A DNA stretch of 64,000 nt from Trichoplax adhaerens (taxonomy: Eukaryota; Animalia; Placozoa): the NCBI RefSeq assembly GCF_000150275.1, contig NW_002060976.1, positions 378,854-442,853 on the forward strand. Reading direction: 5' to 3'. Each line of letters opens with the position of its first letter. Positions within the stretch are counted from its first letter, which is position 1. Under the pieces are notes generated by a model that worked only from the letters and a program-made list of their open reading frames with translations, ran no database searches and was not told the DNA's origin. A program made the translations under genes and the position numbers. Shown here in pieces: positions 47,518-64,000 of the stretch.

Positions 47518-50500
47518 TCATATGCTTCTCTTCCATCCGGCTATTTTTTCTTCCAGTTGGTCCACTATAGAAATCTTTTTCATCTTACGTAAAGCTGCAA
47601 CCACAACATAAATATCAGCATTTTGCCCGGCATTATTTTCCCACAATTTTAGAACTTTGTACACTTTATCGTAGCGGCTCTGTTCTCTTAATTTAATTTC
47701 GTCAATTTCTGTCTCTGACAAATGCAACAAGATTCCCAAACGTAATAAATCGTCTATATGGAGTTTCTCTGCTATTATATCGAAGAACCCTGTATCCATT
47801 TCTATATTAAAAATAAAATGGAGAACATGAACTATTGTTCAAGTCGCCAAGGTTGTATCTGATCTAGAATGCATGATTAGCAATGATATAGCAAATGCTT
47901 TTTCATAATAACTGTAATTTTAAAACTGATGATATTTTATAAAATGCAACCTGCTGTTAATACTACGATTTAGGATTTTTAATTGTCGCTTTAGGTTTGA
48001 TTCAATTTTATTACTATGAACTCTTCTAAAAGCTTACTGGATAAACAATCTGAACAAATTTTAAATCGGAAAATTAACTCATAAAATGATTATCTACTAT
48101 TCGGATGTTTCACTGGTGGTTAGCTAATCTTATAAAGCTTACTAGACAAACAATGTAGAAAAAAATTAAGATTGAATATTTTTTAATTTATAAATCATTA
48201 TTTATTGTGTCAAGTAGCTTACTAGTAGCTAGAATATTCTAATTACGATCTTAAAAATTCGTTGGCGATATCATTATCTAGTAAAACTGGATGCGATCAT
48301 ATCATCAGTGGCAAACGTAGCTGAAAGTATTACATCAATTGACGAGGTAAAGTATTCCTATGTTAGAATTTATACGGAGTAATGGCTCTTAATCATATTT
48401 GAATCAATCTAAAATTGAATTACTAAATGCAATTGAGAATGATTGATAGATATCAATTCAATAGAGGTTTACCTTCATCTTTGGTATCTTTCCATCGGTC
48501 TAAAGTAGTGGAATAAAAATAGCAATAATCGATTAATAGTTCTATCGTTCAAGTAATCAGTACAGTAAATTAGTGCCCATAATTCTTGATAATAATCAAC
48601 TATTGTTTACGCTATTACAAAATCACCTTATATTAAATAGTAAAATAGCTATGATAGAGTACATTTATGCCTCTTTGCTTGCTCTAGCGTATGACTATAG
48701 TTTATTATATCATGAAAAGTGATAATATAAGAATGAAGCTGCTGTTTATTCTTACATGCTTACCTATCCAGAAATTTTCATTATAAATCATCCAATCGTT
48801 CAAAGATCGACTCTCAAAGTACATATTACAATGCTTACATTGAATGCAATTTTGATCTCCTTCCTTGTATTCTTCGGTTATACTTGTTTGTGTATTACAT
48901 TCACTACATTTGACGAAATATCGACAATCAGCCCCTTTAAACTTGACCATCCTTTCATTGACAGTGGAGATGAGTTTATTCTTGACAATTTCGTGTGGCC
49001 GTTTGACAAATATAGAATTTTTAACTTTATCCTTAATCAATTGACTTGTCTTGGGCTCATTTATTTTCTGATAGCAATATTGTAAACCGATGTGAGATTC
49101 CTCTTTCTTGACTACAAGGTAATGATCGTCATTTTCTAAATAATATCTGGAACATTGATAGCATAATTTTACGTCCTTATTATTCCATTCCTTTAAACAA
49201 GAAGATAATAAGCAATAATAAATTCCATCTGGAAGATATGGAATATCTGTACGCTCGTATCCGATGTAGAGCCAATCTGATTGATGACATTTTGGTAAAT
49301 CAAATGGCTTAACATCATCTCGTAACAAGTATGGAACAAAGTATTGACATTCTTCTCCGTTGTCGTTCTTCTCATTTGTAATTGAACATAGAATATCATA
49401 AGCATCCATGAGTGCCAATATAGTTTGCTTACTATCGTCGTCTAAATTAAATTTATAAATAGCATGATCAATGTAGGATCTTGATAATTTTCCTGTTGTG
49501 CTGGCTTTCTCATAGTCGCGTTGTATCTGTGCACCTCCTTGTACAAAATCTTGTAATTGAATAATGGAACGAAATATATTTAATAACCAATCGACATTAG
49601 TTATAATAATTCCGTCGTCGCCTACTTTATCACAGTAGATGACTTCTCCTAAATCGTGTAGATACATTAGCATAGCGATTAATTCATCATGGTTTTCATA
49701 TAATCCGTATTGTTGAGACAAGGTTACTATTTGTTGCATTGTCATAATATTATGGACTTGAGAATGTCTAATTTCATTGATAATTGAAGATGCGGATTGA
49801 TTGTTACTGTTAGTAGGGAGCGATTTATTTAATATTGTAGCCATGATATACCATCGAATAGGTATAGGATTCGTAATAAATGGCAGCGATTGTACAAATG
49901 CCTTAATGATACCATGTAAACGAAGACAACATTGTCGACGCTGCTGCAGTGTCGACGGAGTACTATCAAGAGGATTGCAATCAAAAATAATACCAGAAGA
50001 ATAGATATGACTGGCATAAGAAGGCATGCGAGACGTCAATGTAGACACAAATTGATTGAATCGAGTACGTCCATCTTCTTCATTGGTAATATAATCGCCA
50101 TGAGAAGCTACTAAAATAATAATAGGTAATGAATGCTGTGAAGGTGGTAAATGCTGTCCATCTTCACTTTGAATGTTGACATTGATGGTACTTTGGCTTG
50201 TATGGCCAGCTATGATTGATGTAAGCCATTCTTGCATAGCTTGTAAATACGTCGTTTTGAGTGATTGGTTGTTCCTTGTTGTTACCTTGTCGTTAATGTC
50301 TTGATTAATATTAAATACTAAAATATAAATACTATTGACGGAGATAAAGGGATAATGAGTAACATGATAGACGGCATGACCTGCGAAATCCCATATTTTA
50401 ACATACTGATTTTTATCGTCTTTGTCTGTATTTTGATCGACGATCGACGAACAGTAATATTGATGTAAGCCTCGTTTAGACTGTGATTGAATTGGAATCT

Positions 50501-52273
50501 CTTTCCTTGCTATCGCTCCATCTTGCGTAATGACATCAGTTGCAGAAGAATCGACACTGTGTTGTTGCCCATTTGACACAGGTGGATTATTGGTTATAAC
50601 GGGTTGATGTATTGGATCCATGTCGGTTACTGGCTGACTGAGGTTATGTTGACGATCGATACTTGTTTGGGCTAAGTCTTGTATGACTGTCTTGACTTTA
50701 TCGTCTAGTATTTCAGTCCAATCACAACCCTCTAAGTTCATAACATTATAATATGCAGTCTCTACCGTAATATCCAAATTCTCAGCCACTTGTGTCGGAG
50801 ATGGATTGTTGAGTCGTTGGTTGGTAAATATTTTTCGAACAGAAGTTTTCCCCACATTGCGAGCGCCAATGAACATGCCTCGTATTAAATGATTAAAGCA
50901 ATGACCATGTTTTAAGCTTTTGCGATATGCATTGTAATATTTCTTTTCTTGCAAAGCTGTAGAACAACAAAATACAGAATAGGGTTACGGTTATCCATCG
51001 CTCTCTTGTCTACTACTGTATTACAACTCCACTTACCTTTCTCTTGTACGTCTTGATTGTTGTGACTGCCGTCGATAGTATTTGCTGGCGCTGTGACGTT
51101 GTTGGTTTGATTCGGTTGAAATAGTTCAACGATACTTTTGATCCAATTTCTCGCTATTGATGTCGACGATTTCTGCTTCTGGAGAGTGATTTCGATATTC
51201 TTTCCTATCCTTGTAACTAGGCCATCATTTCCGCTTGAGGCTGCGATCTGGAGTGACTTGTTAAAGTTATCCACAGCCTGATCGTACTTGCCTTGGTGAT
51301 GATAGACAAGTCCTATGTTGTGATATAAGTTGGCAACATGGGGATGATTGTGACCAAGGACTGACAATCCAATTTGCAGTGACTTGTTATACATATCCAC
51401 AGCCTGATCGTACTTGCCTTGGTGATGATAGACAACTCCTATGTTGTTATATGAACTGGCAACATGGGGATGATTGTGACCAAGGACTGACAATCGAATT
51501 TGCAGTGACTTGTCAAACATATCCACAGCCTGATCTGACTTGCCTTGGTGATCATAGACAACTCCTATGTTGTGATATGACCACGCAACATGGGGATGAT
51601 TGTGACCAAGGACTGACAATCGAATTTGCAGTGACTTGTTATGCATCTCCATAGCCTGATCTGACTTGCCTTGGTGATCATAGACAACTCCTATGCTGTT
51701 ATATGACCGCGCAACATCAGGATGATTGTGACCAAGGACTGACAATCGAATTTGCAGTGACTTGTCAAACATATCCATAGCCTGATCGTACTTGCACAAG
51801 TCCCAGTAGACGCACCCAATTTGATGATAACTATCGGCAAGACGAGCATCCTTTTCGTCTAACCATTTTAATTTCATTTCCAACGATTTCTTACCGTCTT
51901 CCAATGCTCCGTTGAAATCTTCTTGGCATCTCTTAATCTCGCTTTCTCTTTGTAAACATTGAGCCATGCTCACTTCATCTTGCAGTTTAGTAGCCACAGT
52001 TTGTCCCTTTTCACTCCATTCAACAGCTTCCTTGAATTGATATTGTAAAGTGTAAATGTCACAAAGACCAAGATAAATATCGCATGCAAGTCGATCAATA
52101 TCCGCACTAGGATTCGACAGCGAAGCAATCGCATCGACAGCTTGTGTATAACAAGATAGTCCGTCCACCAAGTGGAAGGCAGTCTTGCATGAGTTGCCCT
52201 TGTCGTACAGTGATTGTATACGGGTATGGTGAGGAAGCCCACTCGTGGAAGAGACAGATTCATCATCAGCCAT
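47518..52273 (-). CDS. ROCO protein copy 1: TPR repeats - Roc GTPase - COR - Death domain, ~1246 aa, 4 coding exons
   Basis: Exons 52273-51037, 50956-48764, 48499-48473 (27 nt) and 47801-47518. All three introns are GT-AG and phase 1, total 3741 nt in frame. Roc motifs GARNVGKTS, WDFAGH, YILVFN, LVASHGD; COR motifs IPIRW, YLHDLGEVIY, YFVPYLL; Death domain (LLRLGILLHLSETEIDEI...VLKLW...VVAALRKMKKISIVDQL). A 5'UTR intron is likely at 52280-52859. Confidence 0.9.
48473..48499 (-). CDS. 27-nt phase-1/phase-1 linker microexon of ROCO copy 1 (DRWKDTKDE)
   Basis: TTTATTCCACTACTTTAG|ACCGATGGAAAGATACCAAAGATGAAG|GTAAAC; homologous to the 27-nt exon in copy 3. Confidence 0.8.
51260..51845 (-). repeat. 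126-bp (42-aa) TPR tandem repeats in ROCO copy 1
   Basis: The anchor ggactgacaatc occurs at 51358, 51484, 51610 and 51736 (exact 126-bp period). Confidence 0.95.
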
Positions 52274-53270
52274 CTTTTCCTGCACTCAATTCAATAGTAT
52301 GTGAGTTAAAGACTTGAACGACAGGTTAGAGACAAATAAGATTCAAATCAAGCTTCGTTGCAACCATTAATGACTAATCATCGGATCGATATTATCTCCA
52401 TGTATTAATGAGATTATGTCGAAATGGTTGTACTTGCGTGTTAGTCGTAGTTCAACAGAACAACATCAATTATTCCATTATAGACAATTTTCAAGCATCA
52501 ATAAATCAACTTCTACAATGTCGTCTATTAATTCCGCATGGAAGATTATCCGAAAATCAATCTCTGTAGATAATTACTGAAGGCAACGCTATCGAACAAT
52601 CGTGTGCTTACGTGTACATTAACAAAATGCATTCCAGCTTACAAATAGATTATACTCATAATCATAATAACCATCAAATAACAATCTTTTTATTCTAATA
52701 GACAACAGCAAATAAATGCTAGCTACATCAATGATAGTGTAAAATAAGAGAGGATGCTTGCAATATAGTTTCGTTGGCGTCGTTTACCTATCTTTAATTT
52801 CTATTTTTACTTGAAATACAATGTATAATGATGGATACCTAACGAAATAGGTTACTTACCAATGGATGTTTTAAAAATCGGCTAATAACAACTTGATGAT
52901 TTTGCTGTAACGTAGATTTAATCCTACCAATCCGACTGCGCGCTGCTTTTTGCAACAGGGGCTAATGGATAAAAAGAGAAGGACAGGTGACATAAAACTC
53001 TACTCGGCTAAACAGCTCTATCCAACTACATATACGCTAAATACACGCACTGATCAGCACATCTAAATACTACAGTGTATCAGCGATTACAGACTACTAA
53101 CTCATTGGTTATTTCCTAACTATAAAAACTCCTTGCAAAGTCCTGCACGAGGAAGGGCTCTATTGATAACCATGAAGCTTGCTTGCTAGAAATCCCAGTT
53201 AAACCTGCGGCTATGACACGCTTTTATTCGTAAGTAGTCCCTATGTGGATGATGCGATAGCCGACGGATA

Positions 53271-53333
53271 AAGGTAAATAAATAAAATGAAGGTAAGGTA
53301 AATAAATAAAATGAAGGTAAGGTAAATAAATAA
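53271..53333. repeat. 24-bp tandem repeat (aaggtaaataaataaaatgaaggt), 2.6 copies
   Basis: Units start at 53271, 53295 and 53319 (partial). Confidence 0.85.
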
Positions 53334-56300
53334 ATTAGGTTTCTTTGCAATGATTTGTGCATAGTCATAAGACCTTATGAAATTAGAACAGCTCTAATTT
53401 GTATTAGTTTATTAAATACGAGTTTAAGATTAACCTACGAGTATCTTCCCTACCGAATTTCTTATATCTTGTTAGCTTAGTAAGCCGTCAATCATGTTAT
53501 TTGCAAAAGTTTGATGCCAATGAACTATTGCATGGGTAGATACAAGTTACCAACAAAATATCGTTCTCTCTAAATAAGGATAGTTGACATATTATCCTTA
53601 TCCATTTTCTTCTATTACAGTCTATCAATAAAACTATCATTTTATCAACAATTTAATTGCAGTCTACCATACGCTATTTATTGTCGTGGCTCCGCAGTCT
53701 GTGTTCATTGCAATTCAATTTGATAATGAGCTTGTTACTGCCATATAAAACTCTCAAATTATCAACTATGAAATTCATCAAGTAATAACTTAAAGGGGCG
53801 ACTGTTCAGGATAGGTTACTGATAGTAAACTGCGAGAAAGAATAGCGATGAATATTATATAACATAGAGACATAGAGAAATGATAGCAGTCTATTTCAAT
53901 ATACATCATTGACATTATCCGATCCATTGAATCTACTGTAGCTCAACAAAGAATACCATAAATTTAATAAAAGATATTGCTTGTAACAAATATTATCATT
54001 TTGTATACAACGTTCGTAGTCCGATGATGAATTAATGATAAACATTTGCATGGTCAAATTGTAAGCCATACTAATAAAGATTGTACAATCGCAATCATGA
54101 ATTTTTTAGACTAACCAGATACATCAACAACGGATTACAACATTGGATATGCAATAAAACGGATTAATCACTTGACTGATCAGCAGTAGCATATTCTACT
54201 TTAATTGGCAACAGGCATCCAATACAGGCATTGCAGTACAACAAGGCACCATCCTCTCAGCACTTACGCTCGCTGCATTCTCGCGCCAAAGAAGCTTCTT
54301 AGTCAACAAGTTCAGCTTCAATCCATGCTCACAGAACTCATTCTCAAGGATAGGTAATCATTTCTACGAGCATAACTCAACAGTTTTCAACAAACAAGAA
54401 GTATTTTATGATCGGAATAGAGTAAAGTAAGATCAAATTAAAATCTTCTGACAGAATTGGCGTGAGTACTGTTTGGCCTGATTGCAAATTGCATGCTATC
54501 GATACAAGATGTAACCCTTCATACATACTGGAAGTACTGCAATCCATAGCAATTCCATATGATTACTACCTTAATTTTATTCAATAATTAACAATCAATA
54601 AATTGTTAATATACACCATTTAAAGAAAATTTTTAGTATACTTTTATAAACTGTTTGACAAATGACAGTAAAAAATCAACGGAATACAGTAGCGCATGAT
54701 GAAGATGATATCAAGCGATTCAGCAAGATGGCTTAGTTATTGGACTCATCATCGATGATGATCGCCAATAAAACAGTGGCCAACAGTAATTTCTGCCATC
54801 GGAAGAACAATCTTCATATTAATTCAAGGAGGCTAAAAGATGCAACATTAAAAGAAACGAATCATCTACGCTTATTTCTCGTATGCACTAATTTACGCTA
54901 CTTTAACATTGATGCCCAAGGCACGCTAATGTTGGCTTCAGACAATAGAGCTAAAATGGACATGGTTGGTACTTTCATCAACTACATGGAGGAGAATTAC
55001 CAAGTCTATGCTATACGTGCATGCTCACAAATTATTCCTAGTCAAAATAATATACCAATCTCAGCTCTAAAAATGCTGCACAGTGCAAAATGGAACAGAG
55101 AATTTGGACAGTCTCCACGCTGTACTACGTTATTTTAAGTAAACTTACTTCTTAAAGCTTCCTAAACTGTTTCTACATGAAGTTGATACCAATGCAATAA
55201 GTTCAAAACCAATATTGAGCGGTTAACTGGTAACATCAGGGTAATTTGCTCAACTCTGGTTAAAACAGGTCATGACATTTTACAGGTGCACTAGCTGTAC
55301 TACCATCTTATACCAAGTACTAACTCGTCTAAAATAATCAAGACAGGAGCATTCTCGTGGAAGCTGATATGCTATCGAAACTGCGATTTGATGCAGTACA
55401 CTAATGTATTCTAGCTTATAAACTGTCCGTTTACTGTACAAGACTAATCAATTTCTCCATGAGGAGTACTAGAGTAGCTTCTCAAACTTGGGTAATAGCA
55501 ACAAAGGTTGTACCCGCTCCATGAGCAGTGGCGCTCGACGATTACAGGAAAGGTACCGATGGTGCAATTTTAAACGAACCATAGACGGATTCTACTTGAT
55601 TTTATTCATTTGATCTTCCATTGACTCCAATTATTCAAGAGTCTTTTACTCGTTTTAGCTCATACTGTCTTGATGAAATGTCGTACAAATTGGCAGGACA
55701 AGCCTGGAGCGAGATGGAAAGATCAAATACAGTAAAGCAATTTCGTCTTAATTTCGTACTTCGTAGCAATCATGACTAGAAGCTATTCACACTCGATAAC
55801 TGGCAATTAACTAGCTCTTCTTACAATTCATTATAGCAAACGATTTCTTTTTTCTCAGAATCTTTATAACTTTCATAAAGTAGGTTAATTTTACCGTCTG
55901 AAACAACGTCACTTTGCATAAAATAGTACAGCATTAACAAGTTTAACTCACGATTAGTACAAGCAAAAATGAATAGAAACCGTAATTAACAAACGCTTTA
56001 GAATACTTTACAATTATAAATGTTTTATCTTTCACCAGCAATTTATAAGTGCTCCATAAGTATTTAAAGTAAATTTATGATGCTTATCATATTGTCATTT
56101 CGTTGTGTACAGGAATAAAATGTTAAAAACTTAATTTTTACATCAGCAGACTCTTACACAAAACGTGATTGTGATGGCGAAGCTAAAAGATTGAAATCAA
56201 TCACATTGAGCATTGCTAATATTGTCCATTAAATTGTTGGTTTATTTCAACCAAGGCAAAATAAAACATTATTTTCTTATAATGCTATTTATTTTGATCA

Positions 56301-57510
56301 TGAAAAAAAGCAAATAAGCACAAATAGACCATCAATAAATTAGAAGCAAGATATGTATGACGTAAGTATGTAAGTATGACGTTGTTTTAGTTACTTGCCA
56401 ACCGGATAGAAAAGGTTATTTTTATCATTTTACACCATCCAGTATTTATATTTTCTAGCTTGACTACTCGAGCATTTGATAAAGAGTTTACTACATTTTT
56501 AATCTCAATAGAGTACAGTATTGAGTTATAAGAGCTCAATTAAGCAATTATAGGCTCAGAAATTAAGTCTCTTGATTTATGATAATTGCTTATGATTTTA
56601 TTTATTTAAGTAATTTTATTATGTTGCTATTGATGACAATACAGTATGACAGAATACGAGAAGTATTTTTTTCAGTAGAAAAAGTAAGTCATGGATATTG
56701 CAACCAAACTTAGCTAACTAATGCTATTGGTAATAAACAATGAAATTTTTATATTGCTTTTATCAAAGTTAGGAGTAGCAGTAGCATAATTAATACGTGT
56801 GTTACAATTCAGAATAGTTAATATCACTAGAAGTAAAATAGAGTAGATAAGATTTTATAAATTTACGGTACGTTTATACTTCAAAATGAGCGATCTTGTA
56901 GGCACAACTTAACGCTATCAATAACAACATAAATATCTTCCAACTACCCTATTGAAAAATCAAAAATCATATTTCAATGTAATAAAGATAAATTAATCAC
57001 AAAAATTCTAAGCTTGATCAGTTAATTCAATACGTACTGCTTAATGTCAAATTTAATTCAGTATTTATATACATGTTAAATGTTATTTATATACATGTTA
57101 AATGTTCGATCTTTAAATGAGCTCTATTTTTAAGTGCACGCAAATACAGGAGCTGTAAAGTTGGGATTACTTTGATCGATGCAACAGATTCTATCAATTG
57201 ACTAGCGATAGAGCAATTTTAGCTATCACAGGCCCTTTACAGCTAAAGTTTCGGAAAAAGCTGTACTTTCTAAATTACGAAAAAGCTATATTATTAATTA
57301 CCGGTACTCGTTCTGTGCGTAATAAGCTGAAATACCAACTATTGATTTAGTTGAGTACAGTATAACAAAACTGTAAATTGAAAATCTAATTTCATTATAT
57401 AGTTGATGTACTATTCTCTACTCTGATCGTTTTATTGTTATTTCTACTCGAAAGTGGGATAATCATGTATCACATCGTTAAGTTTTAATCGTTAGGTCTA
57501 TTCGTAAACT

Positions 57511-57950
57511 TTAATGCTTACCACTATGGACGTTTTCCACTGTTATTTTCCAATATGTTAAAGCATTGCAAAACTCATCAAAGGCTCTATCGTCACGCTC
57601 AGGCAGAATATCCAATAAAGTCCAAACTTTTCTGTAAAACAGAATTAAATAATTACGATAACTGCTCTCCGACTACAAAATTTATTCTTGCAGTAAATAA
57701 ACAAACTATTAATTTAGCCTGCCATTGCATATTAGATAGAATACTGTTTAACAGTTACTGAACATGTACTATATAAAAATTCCTTACTCAAAAGCCGTCA
57801 ATTTAGATTCGATTGTTTGTTTGTGGAATGATGTTAATATACTCGCTCCAAGTAAATATTCACATATCGGTGAGATTTGATCCTGACATTTTTCAGCAAG
57901 TAACATTCGATTGGCTGTTAGGATTTCACGATGTTCTTGAGTCATTGATC
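57511..57950 (-). CDS. CARD domain, two exons (57950-57788, 57631-57511), not in ORF track
   Basis: Spliced translation GSMTQEHREILTANRMLLAEKCQDQISPICEYLLGASILTSFHKQTIESKLTAFE|KVWTLLDILPERDDRAFDEFCNALTYW matches the CARD consensus (H..L..NR..L; YL....ILT; LLDILP.RG..AF..F..AL). Phase-1 acceptor CCTCAG; phase-2 intron GTAAGG...TTTACAG. Confidence 0.87.
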
Positions 57951-59431
57951 CTGAGGACGTTTTGGGTAATTGAGGTAATTGGGTTTTTAGTAATTGCTCT
58001 TAATCATATTTGAATCAATCTAAAATTGAATTACTAAATGCAATTGAGAATGATTGATAGATATCAATTCAATAGAGGTTACCTTTATCTTGNNNNNNNN
58101 NNNNNNNNNNNNNNNNNNNNNNNNNNNNNNNNNNNNNNNNNNGCGAGGGCCAATAAACATGCCTCGTATTAAACGATTAAAGCAATGGCCATGTTTTAAT
58201 GCTTTGCTATATGCATTGTAATATTTCTTTTCTTGCAAAGCTGTAGAACAACAAAATGCAGAATAGGGTTACGGTTATCCATCGCTCTCTCGTCTACTAC
58301 TGTATTAAAACTCTACTTACGTTTCTCTTGTACGTGTTGGTTGTTATGGCTGCCGTCGATCGTATTTGCTGGCGCTATATCGTTGTTGGTTTGATTCAGT
58401 TGAAACCGTTCAAGGATACTTTTGATCCAATTTCTCGCTATTGATGTCGGCGATTTCTGCTGCCGGAGAACGATTTCGATATTCTTTTTGGTCATTGTAA
58501 CTAGGCCATCATTTCCGCTTAAGGTTGCGATATACAGTGACTTCTTAAAGTTATCCAGAGCCTGATCGATCTTGCCTTGGTGACTATAGACAACTCCTAT
58601 GTTGTTATATGAGTTGGCAACATCAGGGTGATTGTGACCAAGGACTGACAATCGAATTTGCAGTGACTTGTCATGCATATCCATAGCCTGATCGATCTTG
58701 GCTTGGTCAAGATAGACACATCCTATGCTGTGATATGACCACGCAACATCAGGATGATTGTGACCAAGGACTGACAATCGAATTTGCAGTGACTTGTTAT
58801 ACATCTCCACAGCCTGATCGTACTTGCCTTGGTCATGATAGACAACTCCTATGTTGTGATATGACTGCGCAACATCGGGATGATTGTGACCAAGGACTGA
58901 CAATCGAATTTGCAGTGACTTGTCATGCATCTCCATAGCCTGATCGTACTGGCACAAGTTCCAGTAGACGCGCCCAATTTGATGATAACTATCGGCAAGA
59001 CGAGTATCCTTTTCGTCTAACCATTTTAATTTCATTTTCAACGATTTCTTACCGTCTTGCAGTGCTCCGTTGTAATCCCCCTGGCGTCTCTTAATCTCGC
59101 TTTTTCTTAGTAAACATTGAGCCATGCGCACTTTATCTTGCAGTTTAGTAGCCACAGTTTGTCCCTTTTCACTCCAATCAACAGCTTCCTTGAATTGATA
59201 TTGTAAAGTGTAAATGTCACAAAGACCAAGATAAATATCGCATGCAAGTCGATCAATATCCGCACTAGGATTCGACAACGAAGCAATCGCATCGACAGCT
59301 TGTGTATAACAAGATAGTCCGTCCACCAACTGGAAGGCAGCCTTGTACGAGTTGCCCTTTTCGTACAGTGATTGTATACGGGTATGGTGAGGAAGCCCAC
59401 TCGTGGAAGAGACAGATTCATCATCAGCCAT
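57511..59431 (-). CDS. ROCO protein copy 2: TPR - [Roc-COR mostly inside assembly gap] - CARD
   Basis: TPR exon 59431-58321; 80-bp phase-1 intron 58320-58241; Roc start (LIRGMFIGPR) running into the N-gap. After the gap comes the 3' end of the linker microexon (CAAGATAAAG|GTAACC, ending 58083), then CARD exons 57950-57788 and 57631-57511. The exact C-terminus is uncertain (alternative phase-1 donor at 57521). Confidence 0.75.
58093..58142. other. Assembly gap (50 N) hiding most of the Roc-COR exon of copy 2
   Basis: The flanks align to copy 1 at ~50859 and ~48483, implying about 2.4 kb of missing sequence. Confidence 0.9.
58545..59000 (-). repeat. 126-bp TPR tandem repeats in ROCO copy 2
   Basis: The anchor ggactgacaatc occurs at 58642, 58768 and 58894. 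The TPR exon is 1111 nt versus 1237 nt in copy 1, exactly 126 nt shorter. Confidence 0.95.
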
Positions 59432-59565
59432 CTTTTCCTGCACTCAATTCAATAGTATGTTAGTTAAAGACTTGAACGACAGGTTAGAGACAAATAAGAT
59501 TGAAATCAAGCTTCGTTGCAACCATTCATGACTAATCATCGGATCGATATTATCTCTCTGCATTA

Positions 59566-60083
59566 ATGAGGTCATGTCGGAATGGTTGTACTTGCGTGCT
59601 AGTCGTAGTTCAACACAACAACATCAATTATTCCATTATAGACAATTTTCAAGCATCAACAAATCAACTTCTACAATATCGTCTATCAATTTCGCATGGA
59701 AGATTATCCGAAAATCATTCAATCAATCTCTGTAGCTGATTACTGAAGACAACGCTATCGAACAATCGTGTGCTGGCATCAATCAATACCAAACTAAATC
59801 CAAGGAGTAGACTAATTTACGTGATGAGGTTATGTCGGAATGGTTGTATGTGCGTGCCAGTCGTAGTTTAAACACAACAACATCAATTATTCCATTATAG
59901 ACAATTTTCAAGCATCAATAAATCAACTTTTACAATGTCGCTATCCATTCCGCATGGAAGATTATCCGAAAATTATTCAATCAATCTCTGTGGGTGATTA
60001 CTGAAGATAACGCTATCGAACAATCGTGTGCTGGCATCAAAATCAATACCAAACTAAATCCAAGGAGTAGACTAATTTACGTG
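59566..60083. repeat. ~258-bp tandem duplication in the 5'UTR intron of ROCO copy 2
   Basis: atgaggt.atgtcggaatggttgta... at 59566 and 59824; single copy in copy 1 (~52408). Confidence 0.88.
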
Positions 60084-61795
60084 TACATTAACAAAATTCT
60101 CTCCAGCTTACAAATACATTATACTCATAATCATAATGACCATCAAACAACGATCGTTTTACTCTAATAGATAATGGCAAAATGCATGCTAGCCACATCA
60201 ATGATAGTGCAAAATAAGAAAGGATGCTTATAATATAGTTTCGTTGGCGTCGTTTACCTATCTTTCATTTCTATTTTTACTTGAAATACAATGTATAAGG
60301 ATGGATACCCAAACGGAATAGGTCACTTACCAATAGATGTTTTAAAAATCGGCTAATAACAACTTGATGATTTTGCTGTGACGTCGATTTAATTCTATCA
60401 ATCCGACTGCGCGCTGCTTATTGCAAATAGGAGCAAGTGGATAAAAAGAGAATCGACAGGTGACATAAAACTCTACTCGGCTAAACAGCTCTATCCCACT
60501 GCATATACACTAAATACACGCTTTGATTACAGCGATTACAGACTACTAACTCATTGGTTATTTCGTACCTATAAGTAGTCCTTGCAAAGTCCTGCATGAG
60601 GAAGGGCACTATTGATAACCATGAAGCTTGCTTGGCTAGAAATCCCAGTTGAACCTGCGGCCATGCCGCGCTTTTACTCTTTAGTCTCATGTGGATGATG
60701 TAATAGCCGACGGATAAAGGTTGCTATAGTAACTGCGCCATTAAGTTAGGGTTTTATTAATTAACTTATGCTTTGCTAGGTCTTCTATATTATATTGCTG
60801 TACCGCGTACAGGTAGTCCTTTCTTTAGTATATAGTTTATATCGCTATATTATGATCTTATGGTGACGCCTAAATTAAACTACTTAATTCAATCTATTGA
60901 CGAAAAATTGAATGTATACTCAAAGCTCTCGAGGCTGACCATTGACTGAACTACTGACCTTTAAATTTCTACATTATCCATGATGGACACTTGTTGATTA
61001 CTTAAGTATGTGGGCTCTCTCTGCATAAGGTAGATGCACCGTAAGTGTCCACCAAAATGGGTAATAGCCTTAAATATCCTTTAATTGTAACTCTGAATTA
61101 TTAATATATACGTTAAAATACCTATACAGAACAGAAAAAAGATACTAAAGTTCATATACAATCATCTTAGCAGGATTCTATAAAATGCCTTTAGAAGGTG
61201 TATTTGCATAAACCTTGTTATGAGCTGCGGTTCTCGTTTGCAAAAATTAATTTAAGGACATATTTCTACTATCGTATTTTTGTTGATAAGAAATATTCTT
61301 CATTCTGTTCTATTCAGTCTTGGTAACCCTAAAATCCTAATCAAAAACTAAATATCCGTGCCAATCAATTATTGTAATACCGCTACTTTATGTAGCATAT
61401 GAATATAATGCACTTTATTCCTATACGATTTTTTAGTGGGTTACTTCTCATTCTACCTTCGACTCGAATCATGTCCCAAACCGTAAAGTGAGACAACTAA
61501 ATATTGGTAAAGGGCTACAATTAGAGGTAAATTTATGTTATTTTTAAATAAAATTAGGTTTCTTTGCAATGACTTATACATAGTCATAAGACCTTATGAA
61601 ATTAAAACAGCTCTAATTTGTATTAGTTTATTAAACACGAGTTTAAGATTAACCTACGAGTATCTTCCCTACCGAATTTCTATGTCTTGTTAGCTTAGTA
61701 AGCCGTCAATCATGCTTATAATGTTGTCATTTCGTTGTGGACAGGAATAAAATGTTAAAAACTTAATAATTTTCACATCAGCAGATTCTACACAA

Positions 61796-61845
61796 NNNNN
61801 NNNNNNNNNNNNNNNNNNNNNNNNNNNNNNNNNNNNNNNNNNNNN
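61796..61845. other. Assembly gap (50 N)
   Basis: N run; the flanks match paralogous sequence around 56160 and 56250, so about 90 bp is probably missing. Confidence 0.9.
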
Positions 61846-61975
61846 ATCAAGGCAAAACAAAACATTATTTTCTTATAACGCTAATTATTTTGATCTTAAA
61901 AAAATGCAAATGAGCACAAATAGACCATCAATAAATTAGTATCTACACTATAGTAAACAAAAGAAGATTAGTCCT

Positions 61976-64000
61976 CTAGGAATTTTGTTCGTTTGGGATA
62001 ATAATATCATTTCTGTCAATCGTTTCCAAAGCGTTCCGCAATAGATTAAGAGTAGCATTTGGGTATTTCCTTCTGTACCACTGATTAAGCGATTGGATGG
62101 CACTGTTATAGGCATGACCACGATGTTTTGCTTCGATAACCTCAGTATCAATTGTTGGATCTAGGACTGTAGCTAATTTTGTCCAGTCTACACCAACACA
62201 ACTAGCGATCAAGTGAAAATAGTTTCTAGGATCTATAAGGCACGAATGAATATATTACCACATACGTCATCTTAAAATTACAAATTGAAATTATCTTATC
62301 ATGGACTAGCCGAACCCGCATACTCAGCTGTGTGCTATCAATGTGACTCAATAATTTAAGGAAGTACCACATGATTTAAATGTGGATACATTTGTATTAA
62401 TTTAACCTAATTCATTTTACTTATTGTTGGATACTCGCAAGTAAAGTAGTGGAGTAGTAGCTTATATGTTCTAATTATAATCTGAAATATTCGTTGCTAT
62501 TCTAATTAGCTAGCAGAGCTTTGTGAGATAATATCACACATAATAATTACTTCTAGTTACTATTATAATTAAATGGGCAAATTAATTACTATAATTATGA
62601 ATAGAAAACGATTTCATTGACACTTACCGTCATCTCTCACATCTATCCATCGCTCTAAAGGAATGAAATAAAGAAGAGGAATAATAAATTGGCAGTTCTA
62701 TGGTAGTTGAATTGAAGCAAATAGTAAAAGTTATGCACAGTAAAATGAAAAGTACACCTAGAAACGGTTTACAAAGAATGCTCTCTTCCTCTTTCTCTAT
62801 TTATGTGCTCTATAACCTCTATATATGCGTGTCCTATAAAGCTATGGAACTGATTAGCTACGATGTAAAATTAAGAACATTCTCGTACTTCTGATGGTTA
62901 TGAATACTTTTGATGTTACAAAGCAATTGCGGAAAAAATTCAACGAGTTCTATATTGCCAAATAAACAGACTATAATAGATGAACTGGCTATACCGAAAG
63001 ATTGCTATCTATTTATTATTAATAAGAAATATATGTAAATTATAATTAGTAAATACTACCACTTCATCAACTATTGTAGATTGTACAATAATTATTGCAA
63101 CTTGAGAACTAAATTAAGATGGAGATCATTGCCACTCTACTTAATCTCGGATGTGATTTAGCTCGATTGCATTAGTATTTTGCTACAGATTAAGCAAAGG
63201 TGATGTTGTAATAATCTTATTGTAGTGTGTGGAAACGTTTTAACCATCGAACACTTGATATTACGAATAACTTAGGCTAGCGCTCTTGTCAGATACATGA
63301 CGGTAAAAAAAGACGTGGCAATAACAAAGCTACTGGCTGATTTTATATCCTTACCTATCGATAACTCTTTATTATAAATCATCCAATCGTGGAGAGATTG
63401 ACTAGCAAATTGCTGAGTACAATACTCGCATCGAATCCAATTGCTGTCTTCTTCTCTATATTCTTCGGTTATACTTATTTCTTCATTACACTCGTTACAT
63501 TTAACGTAAAATCGGCAACGAGCCCCTTGAAAATTTATCATCCTTTTATCCACAATGGAGATAAGCTTATTCTTGACAATATCGTGCGGCCGCTTGTTAA
63601 ATATAGAATTCTTAACTTTGTCGATCACCAATTTACCAATGTCCAGCTGATTGATTTTCTGATAGCAATATTGTAAACCAATGTAAGGTCCTTCTTTCTT
63701 AATTATCAGGTAATGATCATCATTTGCTAAATAATATTTAGCGCATCGATAATATAATTCTACAACCTTATTATTCCATTGTATTAAACAAGATGATAGC
63801 AGGCTGTGAAAAATTCCATATGGAATATCTCCTTTCTCGTATCCGATGTAAAGCCAATCTGAGGCATGATATTTACGCAAATCAAAGGGCTTAACATTAC
63901 GTGGTAACAAGTATGGAACAAAATATTGCCACTCTTCTGTAGTATCATCCAGTTCATTTCTAATACAAAATAGGATATCATAAGATTCCATGAGTGCAAT
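61976..64000 (-). CDS. ROCO protein copy 3 (3' part): COR C-terminus - linker microexon - Death domain
   Basis: COR exon from beyond 64000 to 63355 (donor ATAG|GTAAGG, phase 1); 27-nt microexon 62654-62628 (ERWIDVRDD); terminal exon 62232-61976 DPRNYFHLIASCVGVDWTKLATVL...SLNQWYRRKYPNATLNLLRNALETIDRNDII (Death domain consensus). Confidence 0.85.

What the first reader, a model, noticed from the sequence alone, without database searches (positions are those of the whole stretch)
56344..58092. Hidden CARD cassette that appears to have replaced the Death exon in copy 2; breakpoints visible
After the microexon, the copy-2 intron is nearly identical to the copy-1 intron for ~90 bp (58082-57990 vs 48472-48380). 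It then switches to unrelated sequence containing two CARD exons. From ~56343 downward the sequence matches the 3' flank of copy 3 (56080-56343 vs 61712-61939), where the Death stop codon lies only ~35 bp from the homology edge. The ~1.65-kb CARD block therefore occupies the slot held by Death exons in its neighbours. This is a direct footprint of exon shuffling or ectopic recombination.
Basis: partly seen in the sequence, partly recalled or inferred. Interest (0 to 1): 0.8.

Follow-up and report, generated by a model that had tools for sequence, protein, structure and literature searches.

The report
CARD exons swapped into ROCO gene
In the placozoan Trichoplax adhaerens, one gene of a tandem array of TPR-Roc-COR receptors ends in a CARD domain copied from a CRADD-like adaptor gene instead of the usual Death domain, and the DNA joins are still readable; it is a clean but not unprecedented case of exon shuffling in an immune-type gene family.

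Summary
The window is Trichoplax adhaerens scaffold C1381.

- **Frame:** the cassette is entered and left in phase 1 (273 nt), so it reads in frame from the 27-nt microexon.
- **Independent copies of the join:** the upstream join recurs in a paralog on scaffold C1372. There COR exon, microexon and CARD are contiguous with no gap. It also recurs, base for base, in Trichoplax sp. H2.
- **Donor:** it is the second CARD of a CRADD-like CARD-CARD-Death gene family (C1392, C1398), which has the same phase-2 intron.

- The 1.65-kb block is composite: about 1.0 kb of donor DNA, then a 0.58-kb piece (X) native to ROCO arrays.
- Both joins are non-homologous and carry 21-27 bp of templated filler.
- The downstream join is a separate, later event.

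Still open: whether the CARD is spliced onto copy 2. The Roc-COR part lies in an assembly gap, no transcript was found, and CARD copies show dN/dS of about 1 or more. ROCO proteins with CARD or Death domains are already reported for this species, so this is a new member of a known kind.

The parts
58143..59431 (-). Copy 2, 5' part: start codon, TPR repeats, about 80-nt intron, and the first 32 codons of the Roc-COR exon, running into the gap
   Evidence: tblastn of the H2 copy-1 orthologue P0001: residues 1-412 at 72.6% and 413-445 at 87.9%, with no stops. Pfam TPR_12 4.9e-59.
58093..58142 (.). 50-N scaffold gap. It hides the rest of Roc-COR (about 2.4 kb in copy 1) and the start of the microexon
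   Evidence: In copy 1 the two gap edges correspond to 50859 and 48481. The H2 contig NOWV01000207.1 ends at the same base.
58083..58092 (-). Last 10 nt of the 27-nt phase 1-1 microexon (CAAGATAAAG), followed by a GT donor at 58082-58081
   Evidence: Alignment with the copy-1 microexon 48499-48473 and with C1372. The microexon is part of the H2 gene model P0001 (..DRWKDTKDKE..).
57989..58082 (-). First part of the last intron, shared with copy 1 and four other close paralogs
   Evidence: 97% to 48378-48481. 95-98% to C1372, C1098, C1404:929k and C1375:190k.
57968..57988 (-). Upstream junction filler (AAAAACCCAATTACCTCAATT). It matches neither parent and repeats the flanking CAATTAC motif
   Evidence: Multiple alignment of copy 1, copy 2, C1372, H2 and four donor copies.
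57951..57967 (-). First 17 nt of donor-derived DNA, ending in the AG (57952-57951) that must serve as acceptor
   Evidence: Homology to C1398, C1246 and C1392 cassettes starts here.
57788..57950 (-). CARD exon a (163 nt), entered in phase 1 and left in phase 2
   Evidence: Translation. Pfam CARD positions 2-42. 96% aa identity to C1372 and 70-81% to donor copies.
57632..57787 (-). Phase-2 intron inside the CARD, transferred together with the exons
   Evidence: 89-97% identical to the intron of donor copies. A distant ROCO-CARD paralog has an intron at the same position.
57511..57631 (-). CARD exon b. It is 110 nt to the GT donor at 57521-57520 (phase 1), or reads through to TAA at 57513-57511, adding GKH
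   Evidence: Pfam CARD positions 48-72. The H2 model P0032 ends ..HSGKH.
56956..57510 (-). Donor-derived sequence 3' of the CARD. It includes a 22-nt tandem duplication (57062-57105) and a 126-nt multi-copy piece (56956-57081)
   Evidence: Pieces q557-884 and q906-1033 lie collinear after the CARD in C1398, C1246 and C1392 copies.
56372..56948 (-). Element X: not in donor loci, but present in ROCO arrays, and truncated here at 56372
   Evidence: 92-99% to C1375:202962-203535, C1383, C1204, C1094, C1372 and H2 L036. All of these continue past the window's end point with shared sequence.
56345..56371 (-). Downstream junction filler (ACATACTTACGTCATACATATCTTGCT..). It re-copies ACGTCATAC and CATACTT from the left flank
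   Evidence: Identical in H2 and absent from C1372.
56077..56344 (-). Flank A: the 3' flank that follows Death3-type exons in copy 3, C1372 and C1375
   Evidence: 92.4% and 88.6% to 61848-61939 and 61709-61795. 94-97% to C1372 and C1375.
47518..48499 (-). Reference, copy 1: microexon 48499-48473, intron, and Death1 exon 47801-47518
   Evidence: Pfam Death 5.6e-12. H2 model P0001 at 98.9%.
61976..62654 (-). Reference, copy 3: microexon 62654-62628, intron, and Death3 exon 62232-61976
   Evidence: Pfam Death 2.7e-7. Sequence reading.

Best explanation
This is a real genomic chimera in a tandem array of TPR-Roc-COR-Death (ROCO) genes of Trichoplax adhaerens.

About 1.0 kb of genomic DNA was copied from a CRADD-like CARD-CARD-Death adaptor gene. 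The copied piece holds the second CARD (two exons with their phase-2 intron) plus about 0.55 kb downstream. It was joined by non-homologous repair, leaving 21 nt of templated filler, into the last phase-1 intron of a ROCO gene, 103 nt after the 27-nt microexon. There it took the place of the rest of the intron and the Death exon.

The cassette is symmetric (phase 1 in, phase 1 out, 273 nt). The predicted product therefore reads ...COR-microexon-CARD and stops 3 codons after exon b.

The chimera then duplicated with its array, giving the C1372 paralog. In the window's lineage a second non-homologous deletion later fused element X to flank A. That step removed whatever Death3 module lay downstream.

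Inferred, not shown: the gene is spliced as TPR-Roc-COR-CARD. The CARD would then let this receptor engage CARD partners such as CARD-caspases directly, without the Death-to-CARD adaptor step used by its Death-tailed neighbours.
For: Junctions:
- The upstream and downstream homology edges are confirmed.
- The same upstream join, filler included, is on C1372. There the COR exon (98% aa identity to copy 1), microexon and CARD are contiguous.
- Both joins are 100% identical in the independent H2 assembly.

CARD identity:
- The two exon halves hit Pfam CARD collinearly.
- P0032 scores CARD at 6.3e-12 and matches the RAIDD CARD structure 3crd at 1e-7.
- The AlphaFold2 model has pLDDT 88 and a kinked helix 1. 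All top Foldseek hits are CARDs, with TM 0.72-0.74.

Donor and polarity:
- Cassette copies are 84-94% identical in nucleotides from 17 nt before exon a onward, on C1398, C1246 and C1392.
- These copies share a further 0.8-1.1 kb of upstream sequence with each other, including a first CARD exon with an ATG (Pfam 1.1e-7; three full copies).
- A Death exon lies downstream on C1392 (8.7e-11).

Death as the ancestral tail:
- All other paralogs sharing the 103-nt intron start run on into Death exons.
- All full-length protein models in this clade carry PF00531 (Death) and none carries CARD.

Phases were read directly from the sequence. No other death-fold exon lies downstream of the CARD in copy 2. 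The block has no terminal inverted repeats.
Against: - Copy 2's own Roc-COR lies in the 50-N gap, so physical linkage of the TPR part to the CARD rests on scaffolding.
- No transcript or protein model joins COR to this CARD. H2 annotates a stand-alone 92-aa CARD gene.
- The donors' likely native acceptor (TTTTAG, 27 nt upstream) was not transferred. Copy 2 must therefore use an AG that is internal or alternative in the donors.
- CARD exons are no better conserved than their intron. Pairwise dN/dS is about 0.5-5 on small counts. This fits relaxed constraint as well as diversifying selection.
- H1 and H2 differ by only about 0.2% here, so conservation in H2 says little about function.
Confidence: 0.7

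Rival explanations
1. The genomic join is real, but the CARD exons are not part of the ROCO transcript. They form either a stand-alone CARD-only gene starting at the ATG at 57945, or a decaying relic beside a truncated copy 2.
For: - H2 annotates exactly this as a 92-aa protein named CRADD.
- dN/dS is about 1 or more, and the exons are not better conserved than the intron.
- The donors' native acceptor was not transferred.
- One sister cassette (C1398:25235) already carries stop codons.
Against: - The ATG is inherited from an internal position in the donor CARD.
- The H2 contig begins only 90 nt upstream, so its annotators could not have modelled an upstream exon.
- The microexon, its GT donor, a pyrimidine-rich AG acceptor and the phase-1 match are all retained in three copies: the window, C1372 and H2.
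- The reading frame is open in all three.
Confidence: 0.25
2. The history is insertion followed by loss, not a one-step replacement. The CARD cassette first landed upstream of a still-present Death exon. That gave TPR-Roc-COR-CARD-Death, which is possible because exon b leaves in phase 1 and Death exons are entered in phase 1. The Death3 module was deleted later, in the window's lineage only.
For: - C1372 shares the upstream join but not the downstream one. There X runs on as it does in C1375, C1383 and C1094.
- On C1375 and its H2 counterpart L036, X is followed about 2.2 kb later by a hybrid-intron plus Death3 exon plus flank A module.
- Phase compatibility was read from the sequence.
Against: - The part of C1372 downstream of X is lost in a 12.6-kb N gap, so no CARD-then-Death locus has actually been seen.
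- On C1375 the position before X is held by a Death1-like exon, not by a CARD.
Confidence: 0.3
3. The polarity is reversed. ROCO-CARD is the older state, and either the Death tails or the C1398/C1392 cassettes derive from it.
For: Distant ROCO paralogs (30-33% identity in Roc-COR) also end in a CARD with the same intron position. ROCO-CARD as an architecture is therefore old.
Against: - Those CARDs are only 31-38% identical to this one. The CRADD-like cassettes are 70-81% identical in protein and 84-94% in nucleotides.
- Copy 2 is the sequence that switches parents within 21 nt. Each parent family is internally collinear across the breakpoint.
Confidence: 0.05
4. The join is an assembly artefact: a chimeric contig made from repeats.
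For: The locus is repeat-rich and flanked by gaps. Both the T. adhaerens and the H2 assemblies break at the microexon.
Against: No N lies between 58092 and 56077. The upstream join was assembled three times independently from non-identical sequence: the window, C1372 at 97-99%, and H2.
Confidence: 0.03

Closest known systems
Trichoplax adhaerens ROCO repertoire (Civiero et al. 2014, PMC4104024)
   Same: At least 17 ROCO genes are reported whose Roc-COR core is surrounded by TPR, LRR, CARD and Death domains. Copies 1-3 here are TPR-Roc-COR plus a death-fold tail.
   Different: That survey lists domain architectures from protein models. It does not describe this locus, a donor, or nucleotide-level breakpoints. 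The copy-2 CARD is hidden behind an assembly gap and absent from the models I retrieved.
CRADD/RAIDD (CARD-Death adaptor of the PIDDosome)
   Same: The cassette's best solved relative by sequence is the RAIDD CARD (3crd, E 1e-7). H2 annotators named the product CRADD. The donor locus on C1392 has CARD and Death exons in one orientation within 3.5 kb.
   Different: The donor appears to carry two CARDs before the Death domain. Orthology to CRADD was not tested, and its status as a single gene rests on exon order only.
Effector-domain shuffling in invertebrate NLRs (Yuen et al. 2014, PMC3879445; Kamm et al. 2019, PMC6321704)
   Same: In both cases death-fold effector domains (CARD, Death, DED) are exchanged on a conserved NTPase-plus-repeat receptor chassis in expanded, clustered gene families.
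   Different: In NLRs the shuffling is inferred from tree incongruence, with stated caveats about assembly gaps. Here the chassis is a Roc-COR GTPase rather than NACHT or NB-ARC, and the joins and the donor are visible in the DNA.
Exon shuffling in brown-algal ROCO genes (PMC11378527)
   Same: A ROCO family of candidate immune receptors that diversifies by exon-level exchange.
   Different: In the algae the shuffled units are LRR repeat exons of the sensor part. Here it is the C-terminal effector module.
Classical phase 1-1 exon shuffling (Patthy's rule; from general knowledge)
   Same: A symmetric 1-1 module is placed in a phase-1 intron, with module borders at domain borders.
   Different: The module here is two exons with an internal phase-2 intron. 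The joins show filler typical of end joining or template switching, not intronic homologous recombination.

Membership tests
CARD (Pfam PF00619, death-fold superfamily) | Sequence match to the CARD profile above the curated cut-off | tested here: met
   The window's exons were searched separately. They hit positions 2-42 (15.5 bits) and 48-72 (17.9 bits), collinear. The natural H2 protein P0032, from the orthologous cassette, scores 45.8 bits against a cut-off of 23.9, E 6.3e-12.
CARD (Pfam PF00619, death-fold superfamily) | Six-helix bundle with helix 1 broken into H1a and H1b | tested here: met
   The AlphaFold2 model of P0032 has pLDDT 88. Its helices are 3-11, 13-20, 24-33, 39-45, 51-61 and 67-79. 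The top Foldseek PDB hits are all CARDs (Apaf-1, NLRC4, caspase-1, CED-3) with TM 0.67-0.74, though E-values are weak because the domain is small.
CARD (Pfam PF00619, death-fold superfamily) | Homotypic CARD-CARD binding | not tested
   No complex prediction or experiment was run.
ROCO protein (Roc GTPase plus COR tandem) | Roc and COR domains in the same polypeptide as the CARD | tested here: inconclusive
   Copy 1 has Roc 4.6e-10 and COR-A 9.2e-11. Copy 2 shows only the first 32 codons of that exon before the N gap. The C1372 paralog has the last 208 COR codons contiguous with microexon and CARD, but its Roc part is also behind a gap.
Exon shuffling (symmetric-module rule) | Module with equal entry and exit phase, placed in an intron of that phase, with borders at domain borders | tested here: met
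   The microexon-to-tail intron is phase 1 in copies 1, 2 and 3. The cassette is 163 + 110 = 273 nt, phase 1 in and phase 1 out (coordinates under parts).
Exon shuffling (symmetric-module rule) | An identifiable donor gene carrying the same exon(s) in another context | tested here: met
   The donor is the CARD-CARD-Death family on C1392 and C1398. Its cassettes are 84-94% identical in nucleotides, including the intron.
Non-allelic homologous (ectopic) recombination | Breakpoints lie inside sequence shared by both parents | tested here: not met
   The parents share no homology at either join. Instead there are 21-nt and about 27-nt fillers that re-copy flanking motifs.
Transposon-mediated gene capture | Terminal repeats, target-site duplication or transposase remnants at the block ends | tested here: not met
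   There are no terminal inverted or direct repeats at 57988 and 56344. No Pfam-bearing ORFs lie in the block or its flank. A 126-nt multi-copy piece inside the block remains unexplained.
CRADD/RAIDD-like adaptor (the donor) | CARD and Death domains in one protein | tested here: inconclusive
   On C1392, CARD1 (1.1e-7), CARD2 and Death (8.7e-11) exons lie on the same strand within 3.5 kb. No transcript or protein model was checked.

The most novel reading that the evidence does not exclude
The receptor captured the CARD of its own downstream adaptor. Death-tailed TPR-Roc-COR receptors would signal through a CRADD-like CARD-CARD-Death adaptor by Death-Death contact. Copy 2 and its C1372 paralog, having taken that adaptor's second CARD, would either recruit the CARD partner directly (a short circuit) or act as a decoy. 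Under this reading the phase-1 intron behind the conserved microexon is an evolved docking site where effector cassettes are repeatedly exchanged. At least four different breakpoints occur in it, at +103, +269 and +343 nt and at the native Death1 tail.
Probability: 0.2. Interest if true: 0.65.

Novelty: new member of a known kind. Interest (0 to 1): 0.45.

Why it matters
Effector-domain shuffling is widely invoked to explain the diversity of invertebrate intracellular receptors. It is almost always inferred from trees and is often confounded by poor assemblies. Here recipient, donor, both joins and the phase logic can all be read in the DNA of a very early-branching animal. This gives a concrete, datable example and a testable prediction: a Roc-COR receptor rewired from Death to CARD signalling. 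It also flags a gene that current annotations split or miss. It does not reveal a new kind of system.

Tried and rejected
**Transcript or protein evidence for the chimera.** Word searches with the Roc-COR ORF, the COR C-terminal part of the C1372 paralog and CARD exon a found no protein joining COR to this CARD. Only the 92-aa H2 model turned up. Length limits and 90% clustering mean this is weak negative evidence. The large representative search was not run. It is costly, and a ROCO-CARD protein would probably be clustered under a ROCO-Death representative.

**H2 orthologue of copy 2's TPR/Roc part.** None of P0028, P0005, P0003, P0023 or P0027 matches copy 2 closely.

**Other features in the region.**
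- A second death-fold exon downstream of the CARD in copy 2: none by tblastn or Pfam.
- Transposon signatures and RNA families in 53000-62500: none.

**Limits on what I could fetch or build.**
Those loci are known only from search tables.
Exons were handled separately by reference, and the natural database protein P0032 stood in for the joined CARD.

**Other.** Earlier notes of this scan on the window were first-reader notes only. The sequence is placozoan, not human.
Full report
**Organism and setting.** The window is G000:C1381:378854-442853, from a 105.6-Mb, 1414-contig, roughly 32% GC genome. Protein hits carry TRIADDRAFT names and Trichoplax sp. H2 names at up to 96% identity. It is therefore Trichoplax adhaerens, not human. 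All features discussed lie on the minus strand.

**The three ROCO genes.** Three tandem genes encode TPR repeats, a Roc-COR GTPase module and a 27-nt microexon, followed by a terminal death-fold exon.
- Copy 1: TPR_12 5.4e-77, Roc 4.6e-10, COR-A 9.2e-11, Death 5.6e-12.
- Copy 3: Death 2.7e-7.
- The H2 gene model P0001 (1246 aa) matches copy 1 exon by exon, including the microexon (..DRWKDTKDKE..).

**Check of the observation.**
- Self-BLAST reproduces both homology edges. The stretch 57989-58091 matches 48378-48481 at 97.1% (E 7.6e-44). The stretches 56252-56343 and 56077-56161 match 61848-61939 and 61709-61795 at 92.4% and 88.6% (E 5e-33 and 2e-25). Copy 3's own N gap splits the second pair.
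- The 1645 nt in between match neither neighbour.
- The copy-3 stop codon lies 36 nt from the edge.
- The upstream side of the 50-N gap matches copy 1 at 50859. The downstream side matches it at 48481. The gap therefore hides about 2.4 kb of Roc-COR.

**The CARD.**
- Exon a (57950-57788) and exon b (57631-57522) hit Pfam CARD positions 2-42 and 48-72.
Instead I used the natural H2 protein P0032, a 92-aa product named CRADD and annotated on the orthologous cassette. It scores CARD at 6.3e-12. Its best solved relative is the RAIDD CARD (1e-7).
- P0032 folds with pLDDT 88 into a helical bundle with the kinked first helix typical of CARDs. All of its top structural matches are CARDs.

**Frame logic, read from the sequence.**
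- The microexon is 27 nt, phase 1-1, in copies 1 and 3. Its last 10 nt survive in copy 2.
- Death exons are entered in phase 1.
- CARD exon a is entered in phase 1 (G|GA TCA ATG) and left in phase 2. Exon b is left in phase 1 at a GT donor, or reads through to TAA after three codons.
- The cassette is thus a symmetric 1-1 module of 273 nt sitting in a phase-1 intron.

**Is the CARD downstream of a COR exon?**
- In the window the microexon tail, the intron start and the CARD are contiguous.
- On scaffold C1372 a 97-99% identical copy has the last 208 COR codons (98% aa identity to copy 1), the whole end of the microexon, the same 103-nt intron start, the same filler and the CARD. There is no N in that stretch.
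- C1372 is a paralogous array, not an allele. It reads Death3 gene, flank A, long intergenic, copy-2-like 5' region, then the CARD gene, at 93-99% identity, and it differs structurally downstream.
- In Trichoplax sp. H2 the end of contig NOWV01000207.1 is collinear with window 58091-43338. Both joins are identical base for base.
- That contig ends inside the microexon, at exactly the window's gap. This shows the COR 3' end is a repeat that assemblers cannot cross.

**Donor.**
- A search of the whole genome with the block finds the CARD part (from 17 nt before exon a, window 57967) at 84-94% nucleotide identity on C1398 (several copies), C1246 and C1392. Collinear pieces reach 56956.
- These loci share with each other another 0.8-1.1 kb upstream that copy 2 lacks.
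- On C1392 that upstream part is a first exon starting with ATG and encoding a complete CARD (1.1e-7). A Death exon follows 1.5 kb after the cassette (8.7e-11).
- Two more full first-CARD exons lie on C1398.
- The source is therefore the second CARD of a CRADD-like CARD-CARD-Death family, intron included.
- Copy 2 is the sequence that switches parents, which fixes the direction of transfer.

**Death is the ancestral tail.**
- Five other paralogs share the 103-nt intron start at 95-98%. All continue into Death exons, but at different switch points.
- Copy 1 runs into Death1. C1098 switches after a further 166 nt to a Death3 module. C1404:929k and C1375:190k switch after about 240 nt to a more distant Death.
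- All full-length protein models of the clade carry Death and none carries CARD.
- This intron is a recurrent exchange point.
- Distant ROCO paralogs (30-33% identity) have their own CARD tails with the same intron position. The ROCO-CARD architecture, already reported by Civiero et al. 2014 (PMC4104024), has therefore arisen or been kept independently.

**Anatomy of the joins.**
- Upstream: copy-1 homology ends at ..CAATTACT (57989). Then come 21 nt, AAAAACCCAATTACCTCAATT, that repeat CAATTAC. Donor homology follows.
- The donor part ends near 56956.
- From 56948 to 56372 lies element X. X is absent from donor loci. It is present on C1375 and its H2 counterpart, 1 kb downstream of a Death1-like ROCO tail, and also on C1383, C1204, C1094 and C1372.
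- In all of those copies X continues past the point where the window breaks off.
- In the window about 27 nt of filler that re-copies ACGTCATAC links X to flank A.
- C1372 has the upstream join but not this one, so the downstream join is a later deletion.
- Neither join lies in shared homology, and there are no terminal repeats. The mechanism looks like end joining or template switching, not homologous ectopic recombination or transposition.

**Functional status.**
- The frame is open in the window, C1372 and H2. One sister cassette is broken.
- Exons are not better conserved than the intron (88-95% against 95-97%). Pairwise dN/dS is 0.5-5 on few changes.
- H1 and H2 differ at 13 sites in 5.6 kb. 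Five of those fall in CARD exon a plus its intron, and the alternative states are seen in paralogs. That suggests gene conversion or selection.
- The donors' probable native acceptor was not transferred.
- No transcript evidence was found.
- I put the genomic event at about 0.9 and a spliced TPR-Roc-COR-CARD product at about 0.5-0.6.

**Comparison with what is known.** The closest known cases are the T. adhaerens ROCO repertoire (PMC4104024), placozoan death-fold receptor expansions (PMC6321704), NLR effector-domain shuffling inferred from trees (PMC3879445) and LRR exon shuffling in algal ROCOs (PMC11378527). This finding adds a breakpoint-resolved instance with an identified donor. It is a new member of a known kind.

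Noticed in passing
window 57632-57950 vs L037: Differences between T. adhaerens and Trichoplax sp. H2 cluster in CARD exon a and its intron: 5 of 13 mismatches in 5.6 kb. Both nonsynonymous states also occur in paralogous cassettes. This suggests gene conversion or selection.
   Followed up: partly
window 56956-57081: A 126-nt piece is present in at least 7 places in the genome at 83-93% identity, usually a few hundred nt downstream of CARD cassettes. It may be a small repeat that travels with them.
   Followed up: no
L021 (C1375:199752-200706) and L036:4647-5603: An orphan module (a copy-1-type intron fragment fused to the copy-3-type intron, Death3 exon and flank A) lies about 3 kb downstream of a Death1-like-tailed ROCO gene, in both T. 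adhaerens and H2. It is either the remnant of a deleted neighbour gene or an alternative terminal exon.
   Followed up: partly
window 58093-58142; L037 position 1: The T. adhaerens scaffold gap and the end of H2 contig NOWV01000207.1 fall at the same base inside the microexon. The COR 3' end is 98-99% identical between paralogs and defeats both assemblies.
   Followed up: yes
C1372:7263-10390 (L023/L024): A distant ROCO paralog (28-32% identity in Roc-COR) carries its own two-exon CARD, with the intron at the same phase-2 position, after a 66-nt linker exon.
   Followed up: partly
window 48632-48546 vs C1375:205899-205517: Identity between copy 1 and the C1375 paralog drops from 94% in Roc-COR to 67% from the end of the COR exon onward. 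Gene bodies appear to be homogenised while tails stay distinct.
   Followed up: no
window 53327-53542 and 61545-61719; 56077-53542: The copy 2 to copy 1 spacer carries a 2.5-kb insert between flank A and flank B. The insert is absent from the copy 3 to copy 2 spacer, but it is present at 94-95% identity on C1372 and C1375. No Pfam domain was found in its ORFs.
   Followed up: partly
window 51246-51795 and 58535-58953: The 126-nt (42-aa) TPR units are tandemly repeated at 85-92% identity, and their number differs between copies 1 and 2.
   Followed up: no
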